Origin: Podarcis cretensis
Lineage: Eukaryota
Assembly (NCBI GenBank): GCA_951804945.1
Contig: OX638150.1
Coordinates: 29,388,001-29,452,000, forward strand
DNA length: 64,000 bases
Direction of reading: 5' to 3'
Part shown: piece after piece, positions 22,501 to 41,800 of the stretch
Layout: the number at the start of each line of letters is the position of its first letter
How positions within the stretch are numbered: the first letter of the stretch is position 1
The notes under the pieces: generated by a model
Told to the model about the DNA's origin: nothing
Seen by the model: only the letters and a program-made list of their open reading frames with translations
Database searches by the model: none
Program-made: the position numbers and the translations under genes

Positions 22501-25500
22501 GTGTTCCATCCAATTAGTGGAGTGGAGCCTTGAACTAGAAGTCTGGCAAGTGGACCCAGGCACCTTTCTCATTGTGGTAACCTGCCAAATGAGAAAGTGT
22601 TCAGATTTGACCTGTTATTTGCACTAACAGCCAGTATCGGTAAGGATTGGATGTCTCAATAGGCCAAGAGGATTCCCTCTGGTCCCAAGAAGCTTCCAAG
22701 TCTACCCTGGCTCCGCAGCATGAGAAAACCAATGCACAGATGCACTGCTTTCACGGTGCTCATCCCTGCTTACCCATGTGCCAATTTGATTTCCTGTTTG
22801 AACCCTTAGCTTGGCTTAGTTGGTGCCTGCTTGCTGCAGACCACCATTCTTGGCAGATATCTAATAACCCAGATGAGCTATGGCAGCAGTAGCTAACCCC
22901 CAAGCACTCTCCCAAGTCCTTGGCAGCAAAAAGAAGGGGGAGGGTCAAATTAAACACAGTGTTGGGGCAAACAGATAGGTTTAAGCTTCTCCCCATCCCC
23001 CAGTCCAGTTCCCTGATGGAGATGCAAACTGTGTCCACCCTGGTGATCAGGTCAATCATTTAATGGACGGGGAGGGGGCATGGCCTTGCTGTGAAGACAG
23101 CATCACACATGTGAGTGTGGTCTAGCTGCACCTGCTGCTGCCTTGCAGTTTTGGGAGGGTTGGGTCAAGAGTGAATGCAGACCTTGGGCCAAAAAAAGTC
23201 ATCCACTCCTGGGATGCAGACTAGTTCAGTTGAGATTTTATTGTACCAACTGTGCTAGATCATCACAGCTGTTGAATCAATAGAAGTGTCATTCCAAATT
23301 CTCTCTTTCTGCAAGGAAACCATTAAACTATTAACAAACTATTCTAAAATTGCCCCTCACATCTGTTTCAAGTATATAAGCCCATGCACCCACCCTTAAT
23401 CTATGATGATTCTCACCATCTCCTACCAACCTAGTACCCAACATATACTCAGTGGCTCAAATAATGGGCAGTGGAATTTCTGAATATGACTACTATGTTT
23501 CTGCTGCTCTGGGTTTTGCAGTATGATTAAGTCTTGATCCCCCGAATCACTGCAAAAACCAATTTGCACTGTTTAAGAAATAAAATGCCTTTAAGATGCT
23601 CTCCGTACAATCATTAATCATTCTAATTTAAAATATTTTCACCCTGCTGATTTCTGATGTTCTCTAATTTGCACAGATAAAATAATATTTGAAAATAATT
23701 AAGATTAGCATAGGCTTAGTTGTGCTGCATTGCTGGGTCAAAGTGCCATAATTAATGTTCATCCAGAGGTAATTAATTTCCAAAAGATTTGTAGACTAGA
23801 CTTTATTTCCCACAGCAGCTTAGACAGAGATGTTGCCTCTCATTATGTGGCTGAAGAGGTGGCTTGATTTAATGGCAACTGATGTGAATGTACATGTTTT
23901 TTTTGCTAAGGTGAGTGGCACGATAGCTCAAGCAACAAGGCGGCTAAAACTGCTCTGTTCCTTTGTCAGTCTCCATGCCTATAGAATAGGAGGAACAAGG
24001 CCGGCTCTGTCATGATGTGAAGTGTAGTAGGTGACTTTAGGTGGCAGATAGAGAGGAATGGCGTTTGGGGGGCTGCCAAAGGCAGATAGATGTTATAAGG
24101 GACTTTTAGGCTTGCCAGCTAGTCAGTTTCTAGCACACATAGACAGGGTTGGCCCAGACACTGCTCTGTGCATTCAGTATAGTGAATTTAAATTTGCTGT
24201 CACTCAGCCTCTGCCATTGTAAGCTGGATCTTCTTAGTCCTGGCAGTGAATGACAGCCAGGAAGAAGCTTGGCTGGCTTGTTGTTCCACTGTGGGATGTG
24301 TCAGCTGCCTGCACTCCTAAAGTTTCCTTGGATCATGGTTAGAGATGCATGTGAAGAAAAGGATGGGAGCTCACCACTGCCAAGGGAGAGGAGGAATAAC
24401 AGCTCAAAGAAAAGCTACAGCCAGCAACAGCCAATCAGAACCAGCTTCCTCTGTCATTGTGTGCATGTGTGTGAATGCATACATGAGAGAAAGTGCTTGT
24501 CTGTATGCTTCTTGTCTGTGTCTGCATGAGAGATGGTATTAGTGCATCTTTGCTTCTTTTATCTGTCATGTGCACAGTGTTGGTTTTTTGCTAGAAAAAA
24601 CACATGGAATGTGCACATATATGTAAGAGAGAATGCAATTTTGCATTGTGCCTGTGTAAATGACTAATGGGTCTTTGTAACATTTCCTACATTGTTAAAT
24701 TCCTTGATCACATAATGCATGATCTGTAGTTTGAGGGCTGGTTGACTTTCTTGAGATATGTATTCTGCATGTATTTCCTTCAGTACTCTAAAAGGGATTC
24801 GCTTTAGATTGTCCTTGGAACTAGTTTCAGTGTTCCTCATATGTGAATGTCAGATGGCCTTAAAGGTAAAGGGACCCCTGACCGTTAGGTCCTGTCATGA
24901 ACGACTCTGGGGTTGTGGCGCTCATCTCACTTTACTGGCCAAGGGAGCCGGTGTACAGCTTCCAGGTCATGTGGCCAGCATGACTAAGCCACTTCTGGCA
25001 AACCAGAGCAGCGTACAGAAATGCCGTTTACCTTCCTGCCAGAGCGGTACCTATTTATTTACTTGCACTTTGATGTGCTTTCAAACTGCTAGGTTGGCAG
25101 GAGCAGGGACCGAGCCATGGGAGCTCACCCCATTGTGGGCATTCTAACCGCCGACTTTCTGATCCGCAAGCCCTAGGCTCTGTGGTTTAGACCACAGCGC
25201 CACCCGCATCCTTTCAGATGGCCTTAGGAAAACAGATTTGTCCCCATGGTCCAGATGTTCACAGGAAATGATGTTTCAAGGCTTAGGCTGAAAGTGCTTG
25301 AGGTGCACCAAGCATTTCATCTTTGCAAGGTATCTGGTACTTCAGCATGCTTTGTAAACAAAATGTATCACAGGTACACAGGCATGATTCACCCCATTTG
25401 TAAATAACCCTGGTCCCACATTCCACCCCACATAAACTTTTTGACATCCATGGAGAAGCATTTCCACAGACACCTTCCGTATGGAGTTCAGGAATTATCT

Positions 25501-28500
25501 TATTAACAAGTAGCCTTTTGAGTGGCGAAATTAGCAGCACAAGACATTTCTCTGTTTCGGATTGCTTAAATACCAGATCCATAAGCAATATATATTGTGC
25601 TTACCTGAACTTTCATTTCTCGGTCTGTATCCCAGATTCTTATAATCCGTACATCTCCAGAAGTCATGAGAAGACCAGTTTCCTGTTCCCAGTCCACCAC
25701 CATCCCTGCTCCTGAGGAAAGAAAAAGGTGTGCCATACAAATTTATATCTTGGTACATGTGGACAGATGAAATAAGTCAGAACATTGTGGGAATGAAATC
25801 TTCCGGTCAAGCAGAGCAATCCAACACAATGAGTGCACTGTGCATCAATGTTAGAATGTGGTAGGTACTGTGGACTTTGGGAAGTGGCAGGTTTTGAGAA
25901 AAAAATATAGCAGGGTGCAGGGTGGTGGTGGCGGCAGCCTTCAACAGTGGTTTCTAGCTGGTTTCATTTGAAATGTTTTATTCACAGGAGTCACAAACTG
26001 CTTGTATGATACACAAAAGTGAGGGGAAAGTGTTTTAGTAATTATCTGTCCCCCTGTTTTTGTACCCAGGGAAGAAAAAGACCATTCCTCTCCAATATAG
26101 CCATAAGGTTTTTGTTTTGCTTTGCTTTTTTAACATAGAGATAAGCAGTAAATTGCATTAGGCATGGAAATACTCAAATGAATTTGTTGCAGTGATACGA
26201 CCTTCTCTTGTTTCTAATCAACAAAATCCAATGCAACATGTGTTTTTTCTCTGGTTTCTGCACCTGGGCTCCTTTATAAGGAGGTTGGGCTGCGATGACA
26301 AATGACTCTGAAACAATTTAGGATTCATAGCAGTCTCTTCCTTAACCCAACAAGGCAGCATTTGATTCTTCCTGCCAACCTCACTATGACTTCCACCAGG
26401 GCCTTTTATAGGATAACAAAACAGAACCCAAATAATGACTAATGCACCAATCTTCTGAAAGGGAAGTACTATGAAAAGTACCCAGCCCCACAAAAAGACC
26501 AGATATCTAGTCAAAAGATAAAAGCAAACTCTTGCATTTTTTAATCTTTTAACAGCAAAAACATGTAGCACTCCCTTAGATACTAACTGCCACCATAAGG
26601 GCAGTAGCACCATAAAGCAGGGGGACATTTATTTCTTAATTTAATGCATTTCTATAATGCTTTGTACTGAGTAAGTTTTTGAAGTGGGGTACAGCAAAAT
26701 AATAAAATCATATAATAAAAACTATTAGCTTTATCCAACCAAGGTCTATATAAACAGCAAATGGTATTGAAAGTTTTTGAAGTGGGGTACAGCAAAATAA
26801 TAAAATCATATAATAAAAACTATTAGCTTTATCCAACCAAGGTCTATATAAACAGCAAATGGTATTGAAAGTCAATGAGAGATCATGCAGAAGTTGCAGG
26901 GTCATACATCCCATGCCCCTCTCCTGATAAAGATCCATCAGGGCAACCAAGGAAGATTCAGTCCCCATAACAGGCCTGAGTCCAGACTGGAACGTGTCTA
27001 GAGATAATCAGTATCCTCCAAGAGTGCCTGCAGCTGGGACATCAAGACATAACAGCAGCACAAACATTCTACCTAGTGCTATAAACACAAGCACGTATTA
27101 AGGGTCTTGTATCTACTTGCACCCGGAGGTGCTTTCGAACTGCTAGGTTGGCAGGCGCTGGGACCGTGCGCTCCCGCTGCTCGGTCCCAGCACCTGCCAA
27201 CCTAGCAGTTCGAAAGCACCTCCGGGTGCAAGTAGATAAATAGGGACCGCTTACCAGCGGGAAGGTAAACGGCGTTTCCGTGTGCGACTCTGGCTCGCCA
27301 GAGCAGCGATGTCACGCTGGCCACGTGACCCGGAAGTGTCTCCGGACAGCGCTGGCCCCTGGCCTCTTAAGTGAGATGGGCGCACAACCCCAGAGTCTGT
27401 CAAGACTGGCCCGTACGGGCAGGGGTACCTTTACCTTTACCTTTAAGACAAAAAAAAAGGGAAGCTACTTCTCTTGCCCGCCTTGGATCGTCACCTGCTA
27501 GAGGTGCTGTTGCTGCACAGCACGTTGCAGATCCTGATTTTATCAGGGGGTTGGATTGCATGACCCCCCAGTCCCTTTCCAACTCTATGAGTATGATCAA
27601 GGTATATGCTCTGAAAGCATCTTCCTAATTATCATTGTCTTCATTCCCTTCATCCAGTGGCCATGCCCAGGCCCACTTTAATGTTTCTTGTGGCCTGCTG
27701 GAATTGCCGGCTGCGAAAACACCTGTGCAAGTATGGAACTTGGGGGCTGCCCTTGGGCCCTTCGTTTGCTCTTACTGCAAGCAATAGGGGCGCAGGGTGG
27801 GAGGGAGAGAATGGCAGCAAAACGGACAGTGCATATTTTTATCTGGACATACAAACTTATTGTTTCTTCAGCTTCCTTGGCAACTTGGAGGGGTGCTACA
27901 GATTCAGAGCAAGCAAAAAAGGCGGCAGTTTAGATTATAAGCACCTCTAAAGCATTTTGCGTTTGTCATCCTGTTTATGGTCCGTATGACAAGATAAACC
28001 CAGCAGGCTTGAGATGGATGATGCCTTTTCATCTTAAGCAGGCAGCACTCTAGGAAGAGATGCTTAAGCTGCCAGTTTCTCAGTCATTCATACTTACATT
28101 TTAGCACAAGAATCTTAACACTGTTTCAGCAGCAACATAATCTGCAGACAACACATACACAATATGTGGGTTTTTCTCCTTGCTTGTATGGCATGGCACC
28201 TTTGTTTACTTAGTGTCTGGAGGAAGTTGTCAGGTAGATGAGTCTGACTTTAGACTAGACGGACTGGTGGGTAATCACAATGTCCTGGGGGAAACTAAGC
28301 TGCCTATGATTGATGCTTTTATAGTTTTTTGGATCAACTACTGTAATGTCTCTTTGTGGGGCTCCATGGAGGTATGGAGCTATTCTGCTCTCACATCTTC
28401 CCAGAAGCAAAGTAAAACAAAGTGTTCAACATTTAACTGCCTTGTAAACAGAATGCTAAATAAAGGAGGTAGGATTTAAATTCCTGGCTCTGCCATGGTC

Positions 28501-31500
28501 TGACTGACCTTGAGTAAGACATCTGTTCTTGCCCAAGTCTCACTTCTTACAACTGTGAAATGGGGTTAATAAAGTACCTTAATTCTCTCTCCTTTGTGGG
28601 AAGGGAAGCACAAAAATAATGTTCATCATACATCACTTAAAAGGAGTTCGCTCTCTTGAAGGTTTAACTGCGTGGAATGAACAAGACTCTACTCTATAGT
28701 GGACGATATACAGATTTCTTCCTGAAGACTAATGAAAAATGTAAGCCTCTGCAAACACAGGTGAGAAAGACTCCCTTCTTTATGCTGCTCTATAAAACTG
28801 GAAGCAGTCACTGTCTGAGCAATGGGGGCTCTGCTGAATCTTTAGCAGTTAATGACAAATATTGCTTCTCAATATGCTTATTTGCCTTTTGTCTCCTTCC
28901 CCAGTCACTTGTGTTTTATGAGAACTGCCTTCCTCTGTAAGTAGTGTGGTCTGGATTCTCAGCTGCTTCACTAAATCTTGACAACTTCCTTGGCAACTAT
29001 GCTCAAGAGGAAGTGACCTGGCCTGTTCCCACATAGTTCCAGGCAAACGATGCCGTCAGTTATAACAACCATTTTACAATATAAGGAAGCAGGGGAACCC
29101 TTTTTGGCCCTTGACAGAATATAGAATACGCTCTTCCTCCATGTAGTGACATGGAGGTTTATGTAGCTCTTGCCACCAGAGGGTGCCCATGTGCTGAGAA
29201 CTAGGATGGCACAGCATCCCTCCACTCTCAAAGGATTGCAGCAGACAAGCAGAATCTGAGATGTTTAAGATGTGTTTTTAAACCCATTCATGAGACATGA
29301 AAAGCAAAAAAAGATCTATGGAGACAGCCGCCCTTTGCATTAAATCTAACTCATTCATAAGTGCATAAATATATAGAAAGCTATGAAATGCTAATAGAAA
29401 ATGCTACATAATGATGAGCAAAGTAGCTTGTGTGCATTACCCACTTCAGGGCAAACTAATGTTTATTAAAGCAGGCCTGAGGTTTCTGATGGTTTTCAAA
29501 GAGGGAACTATCATAACATTATTGACTCATGTTTACATCTCAAGTTCCTTGCGTCTTGCGGATCAGAGGCTCGTTGACGACTCTTGATTTCATTTTAATT
29601 AAAAAAAGAAAACCAACCTTTCCATGGGATTGGGGGATGTGGGGCACAGAGTCAAGAAGACAGATCTTTTGGAGCCTTTCCAAGCAATGTTCTTGCAAAC
29701 AATAAAATCTGTGTGCAATTAGTTGTTTCTTGTTTGTTCCAGGAGTCCAAATGCCTGTTTGCAAAACAGTGCTCTCTGTTGCAAGGATACTGCATTTTTT
29801 CAGCACTCAAATAACAGTATTTGTTCATGTGAAAATGCATCCATAGTTGTGAGCACAGTGCGAAGTGTGGCAGCATAAGCGTCACAGCCACCGACTGAAG
29901 AGGACTAGTAACGCCAATAGAAATTATTGCTCTTTCATTTCCTTATATGCTAAACGTTCCTCTGCTGTACAACTCAAATGCACAAACGCCATCCCTTCCT
30001 CTTCTAAGCAATGTCCTCCCATGTTGTGAACTGTCTTTACATAGTTATTTATTTCTCTCCTGATTTTACACACACAGCAGCACAACACAACACAAACCAA
30101 CCTTTGAAACTGGTTGTTTAAGATCTTTGTCAGAAGCCTCTCTCTGGATACCCCTATCTTTGAAGGTGAGGAGGATGCCTACTGGCAATAGGGCTCTCTC
30201 AGCAGCGATGCTTCAGTTGTTTTTCTCCCCTTATCCATTTATGTGGTGCTAGATTTGATGGTCTTTACTCAGCATCTTTTTGCTTTCCAGTGTGTTTTGT
30301 GTTACAGCTGGTTTAACATCTATCTGCTGATGATGTTTGATTGCATTTGTTAGCATTTTAATATTTGTTGTGGTTTCCGATCATGATGTTGTGAAGCTCC
30401 CCCAGATCCAATGATCCCCTCCATGACATTCCCACAGGGCTCATGATGCAAGGTACTGCTCAGGTACTAGAGAGCCTGCTGCTATGTGCTCATGAGGAAA
30501 TCTGTAATGGAGCCTACTGCCACAATTTGTTCCCAAAGAGGCAAGGTTCATGACAGCAGACATATTCTCACAGACACCACGTAAAAGAACTTCCACCTTA
30601 TTTCCATAAGGCATTACAGTGGTACCTCGGGTTACAGACGCTTCAGGTTACAGACTCCGCTAACCCAGAAATAGTACCTTGGGTTAAGAACTTTGCTTCA
30701 GGATGAGAACAGAAATCGTGCAGTGGCGGTGTAGCGGCAGCAGGAGGCCCCATTAGCTAAAGTGGTGCTTCAGGTTAAGAACAGTTTCAGGTTAAGAACA
30801 GACCTCCAGAACAAATTAAGTTCTTAACTTGAGGTACCACTGTACATAAAGTCGAGTGCATAAGACACATGGCAGAAAGCTAATTTTAAAAATAATTCCT
30901 CTTGGCTTCTTCATGCAAGGACTAGCAGTTCTGCGTGATATGGAAGGGTATTTTTAAAATATGTCAGACACTGGAACTTTCCTTGTAGGATTCCCCCAAA
31001 GTCAGAGATGCATCTCAGTGGAATAGTTCCCTGCATATGTTTCAGCAAAGAACCCTGGCATCAGAAACAGCTGCATTCCAAATACATTCTATTTAAATCA
31101 TGTTTTTTCCCTCCATCCCCTCTCCCAAAATCACTGCTGTATCACAGTCCTTGTCTAACTGGCGTTTTGATTAGTTCAGAAATGTGTGCACAGGCCACAA
31201 CACAACAGTATCCAAGAAAAGGAAAGCTGATCTTCTATACACCGCCCCCCCTCCTGGCTGATAAATGAGCCATGTCCCTGTTTTAATTTCCAGGCAGCAG
31301 TGGGGAGGCTGCATTACCTCATTATTCATTAATTCCTGAAAATGCCCCTTCAAGTGACACTCCTGTGCCAAGCATCACCCAAATGACAAAAGAAGACTCT
31401 CTAGAACACCGGGAGCCTTAATTTACCAAGTGAAAAGTGCCTCAAAATAGAGCTGCTGCTCCCCTAATTACTTTATTTTCATAAAAGACCTGACCTCTCT

Positions 31501-34500
31501 CAAGGCATCATGCTCTGTCTCTGACTACAGAGGCACAACATAAGTTAATCCCACAGACCAATCAATGCTGGGATTCACCTACTGCCTTTTTAAAAAGAAA
31601 AACACATCACCTCCTCATGAGACTCCTTCTGTCTCATCCATATCATGGTGGATAATGAATGCACTTGGATGCTGGTTCTGATACAGCACAAATGTGGCAT
31701 GACATGCAGTTCTGCTAGACGTTTTCCGCCCCACAAAGCAGAGTTACTAAGGTCTCTCCTAGATGGAGCTTTAGCACTGCCTTTTAAGTTCAAAATGTCT
31801 TTCTTACAAAAACAAAACTCCTTATTGTGTTCCTTACTTAGTAGTATTCCTGTTCACTGCCCTGCTTCTCTCCTTGCCCCCCCCAAACTTCGTCCCTCCA
31901 ACTTTCTCACCCCTTACTCTTAAAAAAAAAAAAAGGTACAAGACCTGATAACTTTTATGAGCTCCTGGGCTGGGGGAAACTCCTAATCCCACCCCAGGCC
32001 TTGCCTTGGAGCTTCTTGGATTTGAACATTTATTTAATTATAAATTGGATTTTTAAGCACTGCTTACTTTAAGTGTCAGGTTGAAGGGAATAAGACCCTC
32101 AGACTTGACCAGGGAAATCTGTTACTAATGTCTTTTGTGGCTTTTGTTTTGCTAATCAGCAGCCTCATGGGACTGCTTTGAAGAGTGTGGAAGTGGTGCT
32201 CAGGGAGATTTGTAATTCTTTCCTTCCATACCCTACCCCTAAAGCAAACTCTCCCCCCCCCTTACATAAAGTCTGCTATGACTGGGGTGGAGAAGACAGA
32301 CGTGGACAGCAGCTCTCCCCCTAAGCTAATAGTGATAGGAGAAGAATTACATTGGAGAAAAAGCCATGGGATAGTGTTTAATAAATCTCTTTCTCCTGGA
32401 GTACTACTTCCCCACTCTTCAAAGCAGCCCCATGGGACTGCTAATTAGCAAATAAACTACAAAAGATCCTAATCACAGTTCTTCCAGGTCCAGTCTGGTT
32501 TGGACCTTAGAATACATTAATTTCCCAGAAGCAATTGATGCAGTGGTATTTCCCTGGTAAATTTCTAAGGTTGTGGGAAGCAGGGGTGGGAGGTCTGGAG
32601 CACACTTTCTGTTAGTTGTGAGACTGAGGCAAGATGGAGGATAGCCTAAGAGGATCCAACAACTGTCCAGGACACATTTACCACATTTGCTAAACTCCTT
32701 CAAATATCAGTACAACAACAAAAAGCAAACCCATTTACAGACAGCCCTGCATTGCCTTTAGCCATCATCCAGTGAGTGAGGAGAAATGAGGCTGAACCAC
32801 ATGGTTATGCTATTGTGATAGATACTATTGGTTGGCAATCTCACATCCCCAAATGGACCTTTTCTCACATAGAATAATGAATCAGAGACAAGTTTAGTCA
32901 CATTTATCAGATGGGATGGCAGTGTCTTTGCACTTTATAATCTGGAGCAAATATTTTTGTGCTTTTTGCAGTCATTTTGCCACTCTGAAACTCTCCAACT
33001 CCTCACAGAAAGAAATGTGTTCTCAAAGACCTCAACAGGTGTGCCAGGCTGGCTCTGAAGCGGAGCTATCTATTCGTGTGCTCCTGACAGATTGTTGCTT
33101 CCAAAGCATCATCAGTATTGATTCTCTATGGTGGTTGCAATAAGCTGGTCTACTGCTCAGCCTATCAAAAGGAAACCCCTTCAGCCTCCACCCTTCCTAA
33201 TTTTAGCTTTGTCAGCTTGCCAGCAAGTTTCTACAAAAGATGGGATGCTCATAGTAATCCATTGTATTTGCATGTTCTTCTCCACTGCTTCCCAATAACC
33301 AGAGAAAGTTTAAAGGCCCCAACCTAAGAGAAGCCTGAATCACAGAACACACAGCCACCTTTGTTCTGATAATCACTGCAGACACATTCCAGCCCTTATC
33401 AACTAGTGAATATTAATAATTCATAGAGCGCCTAAGAAGATTACATCAGCTTTCTGACACATACCACACATACCATGTCCTGTTGTGCCAGCCATCTGTC
33501 ACTATCTCAAAAGCTGAAGCAACAGAGAAGGATTTCAAGTCCCATCCCTCCACAGGTTTTTTCCCCCCAGTCTCAGTCTAAAGAGCTAAATACATGTTTT
33601 ACTGTAGGTTGGAAATGTTCAAAACCTTTTCCAGACAATTAATTGCCAAAGGCGGAAACCAACTTTCCAGATTGAAACAAGGTCACACCTGCCATTTACT
33701 TCCACTCAGCATCCCATAATTACAAATCAAAGTAACGTAGCAGTCAACAAAGACAGAGGCATTTCATGAAGAGATGCTCAAACATTCCAGACCATCTCTT
33801 GAACTGTTTAAGAGTAATGGTGGTGGCCGAGAAGCTGCTGTACCCTGAGCATGGCTGGCCTGCTGTGATCCTTGTATAAAGTGATCACACAACAATATTG
33901 CCTCTGCATATCTTGAAAACACTTTCCAATTTCCACATTTTGTGATCAGGCTCCCGAAGCGAAGGAAAATGCACGAATCTCCTCCCTTTGCCTTTCTTCC
34001 ATGTGGACACTTGAGGCCCATGTTGACAGAATATCAGATGTAGAAGCCCACAGTGCATAGTACAGACAAGCAATACAAAGCAAGGAATGGGAAGGCCAGG
34101 AGAAGCTAAGCTGCCTTCCAAGAATTAACAGGACCCAGGAGATGTTAGAAGGAATGCCATTTTAAAAACAACAACAACACATATGATTAGAAGGACCACC
34201 CCTCCCGCGCTGATTGTAGGTAAGAGGAAAGAGAGCACTCACCTCCCTGTTTACTTCTGTCAAGATAGATTGAAACCCTTCGGGCCAGACCTGTGAGAAG
34301 ACAGGGATTAAGGGGTTGATGCTAAGGGTAAGTTGGTCAGCCAAAGCAAAACAAATCTTAAAAAAAAAGGATTAGGAAAAGCAACCCAAAAGGAACAGAA
34401 AAGAACACAGTTAGAGAGAAGCAGTAGCGGCAGAGAGGCCTCCATTCAGGGAAGGAAGGAAGGAAGGAAGGAAGGAAGACGAGTAGGTTGATCACAGCAG

Positions 34501-38802: not shown

Positions 38803-41800
38803 CTCTGCCTACTGGGTAATCCAACACTGGCTATGCTGATTCTCAAATACAGTGATACCTCGGGTTACATACACTTCAGGTTACGGACTCCGCTAACCCA
38901 GAAATGGTACCTCGGGTTCAGAACTTTGCTTCAGGATGAGAACAGAAATTGTGCTCCGGCGGCACGGCAGCAGCAGAAGGCCCCATTAGCTAAAGTGGTG
39001 CTTCAGGTTAAGAACAGTTTCAGGTTAAGAACGGACCTCTGGAACGAATTAAGTACTTAACCCGAGGTACCACTGTATGTGCTTTCAAGATGCTTTAGGG
39101 TGAGATGTGTGTTTAATGAACATCACGTAAGCTTTAAAGCTTGGTAAAGGGACTGTGAAGACAAGACCTGAAGGGATCAACAAGATTTGACTTTGGTACT
39201 CTACTCTCCACCCAAAGCAGCAGAGGGAGTTCAAGAACTGCAAGATAAGCATCTCTTAGCTGCTTTTATTGACAATATTCCTGTAAATGGCAGGATTTCA
39301 CTCACAGCAATGTTTATAGCAGACATCTAACTGCCCATACTTTATGATCGGTTCTGTGCACATGTAATGGTGCGTTACAGAAGCTCGGGTTTGCAGCAGC
39401 TGCACCTCAAATTTCAGGCTACCTGGCCGAAAAGGAAGAGGAACAGAATCACCATAATATTCTTTTCATGGAAAGAACCAGAGGAAGGTCTGTCAAAGTT
39501 TTAAGATCTGAGTGAGGCATCGTCTGTGAATTCCAATGAATAGCTAGAAGGCACATTATACAGGAAAAGCCGGGCAATGTGAGGGAGGAAGAGGACATTA
39601 AAGGAAAACATGTAGGCAGCGCTACTGAAATGTAAAACCCTTAATGTTCAAAGGGCAGAGATTTTATTTTGACGTATCAAACCACTATCACTTACTGGCT
39701 ATGCCAGCACAAATATTTTAAATGGAATGCAAAGTGCTGGTTTAGCAACAGGAAGTTTTCAAATAAGCGGTTGTCAGGCTTCAGTGCTGAGATGCACAGG
39801 TTCAGAAATGAGAACTGTCAGAGCATTAATGACTCCTCGTGTCTTGGAAGCAGACCAAGTATCCTTCATTATCACATCCGGCATAGTGGGGTTTTTTTTG
39901 GTCACCTAACCCTGCACCTCAGTCTCTCAGCCGGGCTTGTTAAGTGATGGGTTTCTTGTTGACACCTAACCCTGCCTGGATTCTCAACATGTTCGGGACA
40001 CTCAAACTACTTGCACTACCATCCTGTAAATGTGACATTTCACTTGACCTTCCATCCTCCCTCCACAATGAACAGCAGGAAATACTGCAAGCGGTGTGCC
40101 CAAGTCAAGGCAGGCTGAGCAAGGTAGTATGGGAAGCATGCAGAGCTGGGGCAAAAGGGAACAAGCAAACCAAAAAAAGGATAGTGGCAAGAGGTGAGTT
40201 TTTGGGGTAAAACCCCAAAGTGAGAGGAGAAAACCAGCTGCAATAATGAGTCCAAGGAAGGGCAGTGCTTAGAAAAGCCTCACACAACAATTCTCTATCT
40301 AGAAGCAAAAAAGTTAGATCTGACCTCCAGTGATGAAACTCCAGCGCAGTCCAGGAAGGGAACTCACCTGTACTCCTCTGTTCAGCACTATGAAAAAGTT
40401 TGCATCTATTCCCCATCTGGCATCTCTGCTTAATCTTACATTTATTATTTGTTTTTAAAGTATCGCGGGGCAGAAATTTCTCATCGGCTCCATCAAGACC
40501 AAAACATTGTTAACAAGGTATTACTGTAGACAGTGAAGACCACTCCATGTTACCTAACCCTGTTCCAAATGATGGCAAACTACTTTTGCCCCTTCAAATC
40601 CAGATAGAATGCTAGGTCATACCTACCGCGTGTTGTTGGTAGCATGTCTGACAAGCCCTGCCAGGCTGTTACCATCTCTGGATTCTTCTCCAAGTCAGCA
40701 AAGTTTTTCCACACCCTTATAGCACCATCATCTTGAAGGAATGACAGAAAGAAAACTATAAGGCAATTCAGCTCAGAAGGGTAAGCTGGGCTTACCCAGT
40801 ACCGTAAATTAATCACCATTACTGATTTGGCTCCAGCAGAAAATTCATGCTGCTTCAGACAGATTCCACTACACCATGGTTCTCCAAACATGAAGCAGGC
40901 ATCCTTATGGAGAGATCAATTGTTACTATGGAAAGCTTGATCTGACACTTTCTAATCATATTGTTGAGTCCGTTTGCCTCTTAAGTAAGGGAGTAATATG
41001 CCAAGCTCCACTATCCTCTGCCACATTCAGAGTGACAGGCAGCAACCTAGCTTGACAGCAATATAGATTATGTATTTCCAGACGGCCTTACTGGTAATTA
41101 AGTCAGCCATTTTGGAAGGAATTTTGCTTCCTGCGGTCCTAGTATTATCCCAATTTTGATTGTGAATTGGAGGATCACTGGGTGCAAATAGCATCTTACT
41201 GTGTACTCTATGCTGTCCATGAATGTAACAGTTCTGCAGCATCCGCACAAAATTGCTATCAAAATGCCACCCCACATTTCCCCCCATTTAATCTGGATTT
41301 ACCTGTTCTGTGGAAATTCTGATAGGTTAAAAAAAGGAGGGGGAAAACAATCAATCTGGATTAAATGGGGAGAAATAATATGGGGTTGCATTTTGATGAG
41401 GATGAGACTGTATGTGCCCTGCAGGAGTAACACAGAGTTTCCAATAAACTGCCATGTGGAAACACCCACTGAGGGTTATAGTACAAGAAGAGATGGGGAC
41501 TGGATCTCCCATTGGTGTAACAGTAGCCACTAAAGGAAGGGGAAAGGATCTGATCTAGGTTGCGTTGCAGCATTAAGGTCAAATTCTGATAGGTTAAAGT
41601 TTTATCCATGCAACACTTTCCTAAGAAATATTCTCCCAAACCATTATTTGACCTATAGGCAAAACATATAGGTACCATACAGAAAGCTCTTTTTGATTTT
41701 AAATTAGAGGCACACATTATGAAAAAAACTGGAGAACATGTAATATAAAGATTCTGTTGGCTTTCTATTTTATTCTTTTCCTTGAAGTGTTCTTTTAGTG

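What the first reader, a model, noticed from the sequence alone, without database searches (positions are those of the whole stretch)
34243..34290. Hidden 48-nt in-frame RPTOR cassette exon adding an RRxS kinase motif to a WD40 loop
Seen: inside the 15-kb intron 28 the minus strand reads ccttaatccctgtcttctcacag|GTCTGGCCCGAAGGGTTTCAATCTATCTTGACAGAAGTAAACAGGGAG|gtgagt. This has a branch-like CTTAAT, a pyrimidine tract, CAG, and a GAG|GTGAGT donor. It is 48 nt and fits the phase-1 junction exactly, giving ...SDMLPTTR-GLARRVSIYLDRSKQG-GAGMVVDW... The ORF track shows only another frame here. Established: canonical human Raptor reads LPTTRGAGMVV without the insert (about R1123/G1124 by back-counting from 1335 aa). 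R-R-x-S-hydrophobic is the PKA and Aurora consensus, and PKA regulates mTORC1 via Raptor S791. Inference: a splice-switchable second basophilic phosphosite in the propeller could make mTORC1 tissue-specifically kinase-responsive. It may already appear in predicted isoforms of non-mammalian genomes; I cannot check that.
Basis: partly seen in the sequence, partly recalled or inferred. Interest (0 to 1): 0.85.

Follow-up and report, generated by a model that had tools for sequence, protein, structure and literature searches.

The report
Known conserved RPTOR 48-nt alternative exon
The 48-base stretch is a genuine alternative exon of the growth-control gene RPTOR, kept almost unchanged from chimaeras to mammals and already present in many database gene models, so the exon is not new, although I found no paper on what its 16 extra amino acids do.

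Summary
Window 34290..34243 (minus strand) is 48 nt, with a strong acceptor and a GAG|GTGAGT donor. It is open in the phase-1 frame set by RPTOR exons 40731..40627 and 25711..25605. It would insert 16 residues between human Raptor R1123 and G1124.

It is not a chance pseudo-exon. The same insert, identical in 116 of 138 insert-bearing proteins retrieved, sits at that junction in Raptor proteins of lizards, snakes, birds, turtles, alligator, amphibians, coelacanth, gars, bowfin, teleosts, a chimaera, a marsupial and several placentals.

In Podarcis, Anolis, Tiliqua, Sphaerodactylus, three snakes and two salamanders, insert-bearing and insert-free isoforms are both annotated. Assembled transcripts of both kinds exist. 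It is therefore an ancient cassette exon that is already annotated, not hidden.

An AlphaFold2 model places it in a disordered loop between two WD40 strands. Its core, RRVSIY, nearly copies the known PKA site (RRVSSY, Ser791). A splice-gated second basophilic phosphosite is plausible but untested. Four word searches found no paper on this exon.

The parts
34243..34290 (-). 48-nt alternative cassette exon of RPTOR (phase 1 to phase 1). It encodes the 16-residue insert (G)LARRVSIYLDRSKQG(G).
   Evidence: Sequence and frame. tblastn of the Podarcis muralis X1 protein gives a 17/17 identical HSP at 34291..34241. The same insert is seen in 138 database proteins.
34291..34312 (-). Acceptor region: branch-like CTTAAT (34312..34307), pyrimidine tract and CAG (34293..34291).
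   Evidence: Acceptor weight-matrix score 7.6 bits; 6 sites this strong or stronger in the 15-kb intron.
34237..34242 (-). Donor GTGAGT following exon-final GAG.
   Evidence: Donor score 7.5 bits; 3 sites this strong or stronger in the intron.
40627..40731 (-). Upstream constitutive RPTOR exon (105 nt), ending ...LPTTR plus one base.
   Evidence: 34/34 residues identical to human Raptor 1090-1123.
25605..25711 (-). Downstream constitutive RPTOR exon (107 nt), beginning (G)AGMVVDW.
   Evidence: Matches human Raptor 1125-1159.

Best explanation
Window 34290..34243 (minus strand) is a genuine, ancient alternative cassette exon of RPTOR (Raptor, the substrate-recruiting subunit of mTORC1). When included, it inserts 16 residues between R1123 and G1124 (human numbering). 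In the model this is the connection between the last strand of one WD40 blade and the first strand of the next, and the insert forms a flexible, exposed loop. When skipped, the canonical 1335-residue type of protein results. Both forms are annotated in many vertebrates, so the exon is already known to databases. Shown here: the exon's anatomy, its conservation across jawed vertebrates, inclusion and skipping within the same species, and its predicted loop location. Inferred, at about 0.3: the conserved core L-x-R-[RK]-V-S-I-[YF]-L is a splice-gated phosphorylation site for a basophilic kinase. It nearly duplicates the sequence around Ser791, which the eLife 2019 paper calls the only PKA-motif serine or threonine of canonical Raptor. 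The long isoform would then carry a second such input.
For: Anatomy. Position in human Raptor. A search with the downstream exon alone found a Prochilodus gene model (KAI4894127.1) in which the same 15 residues are joined to the next three or so exons. Two region searches plus cluster listings gave 138 proteins with the insert, 116 of them identical to the window's. Ten of the 15 residues between the flanking glycines never vary among the 127 inserts of standard length. Taxa run from Callorhinchus (GITRRLSIYLDRSKQG) through gars, bowfin, teleosts, coelacanth, amphibians, reptiles and birds to a marsupial (identical) and placentals (pig, horse, buffalo, elephants, a dolphin). Include and skip pairs occur in the same species: Podarcis muralis X1 1376 aa versus X2 1360 aa; Thamnophis elegans 1351 versus 1335; also Crotalus tigris, Liasis, Anolis, Tiliqua, Sphaerodactylus, Lissotriton and Ambystoma. 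Logan proteins of 1352 and 1297 aa sit on 6.5-8.4 kb contigs and carry the insert; one of 1282 aa lacks it. These contigs are too short to be genomic, so they are spliced transcripts. In the AlphaFold2 model of a bird Raptor fragment, residues 570-590 (insert at 574-589) have pLDDT about 25 and no secondary structure, between strands 557-563 and 594-598. A scan of lizard, bird and newt Raptor for RR.S finds only two sites: KMRRVSSY (Ser791) and LARRVSIY (the insert). PMC6529218 states the PKA motif R-R-X-S/T-hydrophobic and says Ser791 is the only residue of canonical Raptor within it.
Against: Many bird entries are homology-projected models and are not independent evidence of expression. Nothing shows that the serine is phosphorylated or that inclusion is regulated. 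No clear binding motif for a tissue-specific splicing factor was found within 400 nt. Placental versions drift (R to K at -2, Y to F or C, V to A in pig), which hints at relaxed constraint there. The insert region of the model is low-confidence by nature.
Confidence: 0.93

Rival explanations
1. It is a real conserved cassette exon, but its role is structural or in binding rather than phosphorylation. The extra loop would change a partner-binding surface of the Raptor propeller, or the protein's stability or localisation, and the basic motif would be a docking element rather than a kinase site.
For: Conservation extends beyond the kinase motif: L-D-x-S-K-Q-G is also nearly invariant. The loop joins a blade-final strand to the next blade's first strand; from textbook knowledge of WD40 folds, such loops lie on the face often used for binding. 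A brittle star has an unrelated-looking 15-residue basic cassette at the same junction.
Against: The match to the Ser791 site (RRVS-x-Y) is hard to ascribe to chance, and the serine never varies in the 127 standard-length inserts.
Confidence: 0.3
2. It is a chance intronic pseudo-exon that is never spliced in.
For: Pseudo-exons with good splice sites occur in long introns. No reads from this genome were seen.
Against: The identical peptide occurs at the identical junction in proteins and transcripts across jawed vertebrates. It is the only site pair of this strength in 64 kb.
Confidence: 0.01
3. In this lizard the exon is constitutive rather than alternative.
For: In sauropsids the insert-bearing form is often the X1 model, and a rattlesnake UniProt entry not tied to a genome contig (A0A0F7Z7I6, 1351 aa) carries it.
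Against: Insert-free isoforms are annotated in Podarcis muralis, P. raffonei, Anolis carolinensis, A. sagrei, Tiliqua and Sphaerodactylus.
Confidence: 0.06

Closest known systems
Annotated +16-residue Raptor isoforms, for example XP_077780211.1 (Podarcis muralis X1), XP_051491087.1 (Apus apus X1, representative of a 950-member cluster) and UniProt A0A0F7Z7I6 (Crotalus adamanteus)
   Same: The same exon at the same junction, with the 16-residue insert identical to the window's translation.
   Different: Nothing of substance. The window is from another lizard: one upstream exon differs by two residues from Podarcis muralis.
Raptor Ser791 (PKA) / Ser792 (AMPK) site
   Same: The core R-R-V-S-x-Y is shared (KMRRVSSY versus LARRVSIY). 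Both fit the R-R-X-S/T-hydrophobic motif cited in PMC6529218.
   Different: Ser791 is constitutive and lies in the long low-confidence stretch before the WD40 domain. The cassette site is optional, sits in a propeller loop, has Ile rather than a second Ser at +1, and has no experimental support.
RPTOR_v2, the human isoform lacking exons 14-17 (recalled from memory, not checked here)
   Same: An alternative RPTOR isoform.
   Different: A large deletion in the HEAT/ARM region rather than a 16-residue loop insertion.
15-residue cassette (AETVSRTRRLNKERL) at the same junction in Amphiura filiformis Raptor isoforms
   Same: The same position, similar length, basic and Ser/Thr-rich, with included and skipped isoforms annotated.
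   Different: No clear sequence similarity, so homology is undecided.

Membership tests
RPTOR / Raptor orthologue | Flanking exons encode the Raptor WD40 sequence | tested here: met
   34/34 and 33/35 residues identical to human Raptor 1090-1123 and 1125-1159. tblastn with Podarcis Raptor maps 11 exon HSPs plus the cassette on the minus strand.
Conserved alternative cassette exon | Canonical AG...GT boundaries and a frame-preserving length | tested here: met
   48 nt, phase 1 to phase 1, no stop.
Conserved alternative cassette exon | Present in mature transcripts or proteins of other species | tested here: met
   138 proteins carry it, including Logan transcript-derived ones on 6.5-8.4 kb contigs.
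Conserved alternative cassette exon | Both inclusion and skipping occur in the same species | tested here: met
   Isoform pairs in Podarcis, Anolis, Tiliqua, Sphaerodactylus, Thamnophis, Crotalus, Liasis, Lissotriton and Ambystoma. These are database gene models, not reads that I inspected.
Conserved alternative cassette exon | Junction reads in this genome's own RNA | not testable with these tools
PKA-type basophilic phosphosite (R-R-X-S/T-hydrophobic) | Arg at -3 and -2, Ser at 0, hydrophobic residue at +1 | tested here: met
   R-R-V-S-I. R(-3), S and I never vary in the 127 standard-length inserts, and -2 is R or K. Motif as given in PMC6529218.
PKA-type basophilic phosphosite (R-R-X-S/T-hydrophobic) | Accessible, flexible context | tested here: inconclusive
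   The model shows coil with pLDDT about 25 between two strands. This is consistent with an exposed loop, but low confidence is not proof of disorder.
PKA-type basophilic phosphosite (R-R-X-S/T-hydrophobic) | Actually phosphorylated by the kinase | not testable with these tools
   Needs a kinase assay or phosphoproteomics.
Neural microexon programme (exons of 27 nt or less) | Length 3-27 nt | tested here: not met
   The exon is 48 nt. No paper linked RPTOR to this exon under the microexon search terms.

The most novel reading that the evidence does not exclude
The cassette is a splice-gated duplicate of the Ser791 PKA site. Cells that include it would make an mTORC1 whose Raptor carries a second cAMP/PKA (or PKD/AMPK-family, L-x-R-x-x-S) input on the WD40 propeller, giving isoform-specific kinase control of mTORC1. 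This function has been conserved since the jawed-vertebrate ancestor, and I found no paper on it.
Probability: 0.25. Interest if true: 0.65.

Novelty: already known. Interest (0 to 1): 0.3.

Why it matters
For the scan this is a correct call of a real exon from raw sequence, but not a discovery, because gene-prediction pipelines already include it in many vertebrates. One point may interest mTOR researchers. The human protein in the solved structures matched here is the insert-free 1335-residue form. A cassette conserved for roughly 450 million years (my estimate of the chimaera-tetrapod split) nearly repeats the only PKA motif of Raptor, and none of my four literature searches turned up a study of it. 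That gives a cheap, testable hypothesis about isoform-specific regulation of mTORC1.

Tried and rejected
Later work on it was confined to local scripts and to database proteins reached through the downstream exon.

The search of earlier findings by place gave nothing near this window. By words it gave nothing on RPTOR.

Rfam found no RNA family in the intron.

Literature searches found no paper on this exon: RPTOR + cassette exon; Raptor + mTORC1 + alternative splicing + isoform + WD40; Rptor + microexon; Raptor + splice variant + mTORC1 + exon inclusion. This is absence within that library and those words only.

A scan for splicing-factor motifs within 400 nt found no Rbfox or QKI sites. It found only generic pyrimidine-rich CUCUCU/UCUU just after the donor and a UG/U-rich run at +62 to +75, too weak to name a regulator.

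My first attempts to identify the species by HSP identity were confounded by HSPs running into introns. The cleaner count shows only that the Raptor C-terminus is too conserved to tell lizards apart.

The chance pseudo-exon reading is rejected on the conservation data.

The exons were searched separately by reference.

Full report
**The observation**

A branch-like CTTAAT lies 18-19 nt upstream, followed by a pyrimidine tract, CAG, 48 nt, and GAG|GTGAGT.

The upstream exon is 40731..40627 and ends one base into a codon. The downstream exon is 25711..25605 and begins with the remaining two bases. In that phase the 48 nt read G-LARRVSIYLDRSKQG-G without a stop. The mechanical ORF list shows only a different frame.

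Searched one at a time by reference, the two flanking exon peptides match human Raptor residues 1090-1123 and 1125-1159 in solved structures. The insertion point is therefore between R1123 and G1124, as stated.

**Is it more than chance?**

The candidate scores 7.6 bits (acceptor) and 7.5 bits (donor). The 15-kb intron holds 6 acceptors and 3 donors at or above that strength. This is the only such pair 20-250 nt apart on either strand of the whole 64-kb window. It remains the only in-frame open pair in the intron when thresholds are lowered to 4 bits. It is not part of any repeat within the window, and no Rfam family lies in the intron.

**Evidence from elsewhere**

I searched 1.84 billion representative proteins with the downstream exon alone. 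Among many single-exon fragments, one 162-residue gene model from the characiform fish Prochilodus magdalenae (KAI4894127.1) carries ...LARRVSIYLDRSKQG-GAGMVVDW... and continues through the next exons. That is the candidate exon's product, identical in sequence, spliced to the downstream exons in a teleost.

A region search seeded from a brachiopod-type Raptor, and a second one seeded from a horse isoform, together with two cluster listings, gave the following:
- 138 Raptor proteins carry an insert at exactly this junction, and 116 of them are identical to the window's translation.
- 32 proteins lack the insert.
- Non-mammalian carriers: Callorhinchus (GITRRLSIYLDRSKQG), gars, bowfin, teleosts, coelacanth, frogs, salamanders, a caecilian, turtles, alligator, many birds, snakes and lizards.
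- Mammalian carriers: a marsupial (identical insert), pig, horse, water buffalo, elephants and a dolphin. The placental versions drift slightly (for example GLARKVSIFLDHSKQG).
- Among the 127 inserts of standard length, ten of the 15 residues between the flanking glycines never vary, including R(-3), V, S, I and the S-K-Q tail.

**It is alternative, not constitutive**

The same species have models with and without the insert:
- Podarcis muralis X1 (1376 aa) and X3 (1351 aa) include it; X2 (1360 aa) skips it.
- The same pattern holds in P. raffonei, Anolis carolinensis, A. sagrei, Tiliqua and Sphaerodactylus.
- Thamnophis elegans, Crotalus tigris and Liasis each have 1351 versus 1335 aa forms.
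- Lissotriton and Ambystoma also have both.

Logan-assembled proteins of 1352 and 1297 aa lie on contigs of only 6.5-8.4 kb and carry the insert. One of 1282 aa lacks it. The last ~390 residues alone span more than 50 kb in this window, so contigs that short must be spliced transcripts. Both mRNA forms therefore exist.

The window's Raptor exons differ from Podarcis muralis at a few residues. The animal is thus another lizard. A scan note calls this genome lacertid, which I did not verify.

**Where the insert sits**

An AlphaFold2 model of an 801-residue bird Raptor fragment with the identical insert was built from a 54-sequence alignment. It gives a 28-strand propeller. The insert (residues 574-589) falls in a stretch (570-590) with pLDDT about 25 and no secondary structure. 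It lies between the strand ...MVTAWQG (557-563) and the strand MVVDW (594-598). By my strand count, this joins the outermost strand of blade 2 to the first strand of blade 3. From textbook knowledge of WD40 folds, such loops lie on the face most often used for binding.

**What it may do**

This part is inference. The conserved core L-A-R-R-V-S-I-Y-L fits the PKA motif R-R-X-S/T-hydrophobic as given in PMC6529218. [quoted passage not shown]

Scanning lizard, bird and newt Raptor for RR.S finds exactly two sites: KMRRVSSY (Ser791) and LARRVSIY (the insert). They share R-R-V-S-x-Y. From my own knowledge, the insert also fits L-x-R-x-x-S, the preference of PKD and several CaMK/AMPK-group kinases.

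A splice-gated second basophilic site is thus a reasonable hypothesis, which I put at about 0.25-0.3. A purely structural or docking role for the loop is about as likely. I found no evidence on tissue specificity and no convincing splicing-factor motifs nearby.

**What is known**

The exon is already in RefSeq, Ensembl/UniProt and B10K annotations. As a feature it is known, and the word 'hidden' does not hold. Four literature searches found no paper that discusses it. The human protein in the solved structures matched here is the insert-free form.

The exons were searched separately by reference.

**Verdict**

The novelty claim is not. The functional idea is plausible and untested.

Noticed in passing
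not in this window (Podarcis muralis X1, P0295, residues 841-865): Lizard X1 isoforms carry a second optional segment of 25 residues after residue 840, just downstream of the Ser791 region. It accounts for the 1376 versus 1351 aa isoforms. Its exon lies upstream of this window.
   Followed up: partly
P0153 and P0340-P0347 (Amphiura filiformis Raptor isoforms): A brittle star has a 15-residue basic cassette (AETVSRTRRLNKERL) at exactly the same junction, included in seven annotated isoforms and skipped in two. It may be deep homology or convergence.
   Followed up: partly
P0021 (Lingula-type Raptor model, residues 840-890): This model, which has an internal duplication, carries a 50-residue insert at the same junction. 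The insert contains RSRSF and ISRMSFY, faintly like the vertebrate RRVSIY. The current Lingula model P0332 lacks it, so it may be retained intron.
   Followed up: no
P0024 (Prochilodus magdalenae KAI4894127.1): Upstream of the cassette this fish model reads unrelated sequence, and the split codon gives Ser instead of Gly. This fits a different upstream exon ending in A, or a mis-modelled start. The DNA could not be fetched.
   Followed up: no
window 26673-26868: A perfect tandem duplication of a 98-nt AT-rich unit inside the same intron.
   Followed up: no
window 27110-27238, with related arms at 25003-25128 and 27166-27293: A 60-nt inverted repeat, 97% complementary with a 9-nt spacer, and related copies 2 kb away. 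It looks like a small foldback or MITE-type element.
   Followed up: no
window 30615-30844 and 38848-39077: Two 230-nt direct copies at 90% identity within the intron, probably an interspersed repeat.
   Followed up: no
cluster of P0261: A 298-residue 'endonuclease V isoform X1' of Muntiacus reevesi is filed in the Raptor 90% cluster. This suggests a read-through or chimeric model with a neighbouring gene.
   Followed up: no
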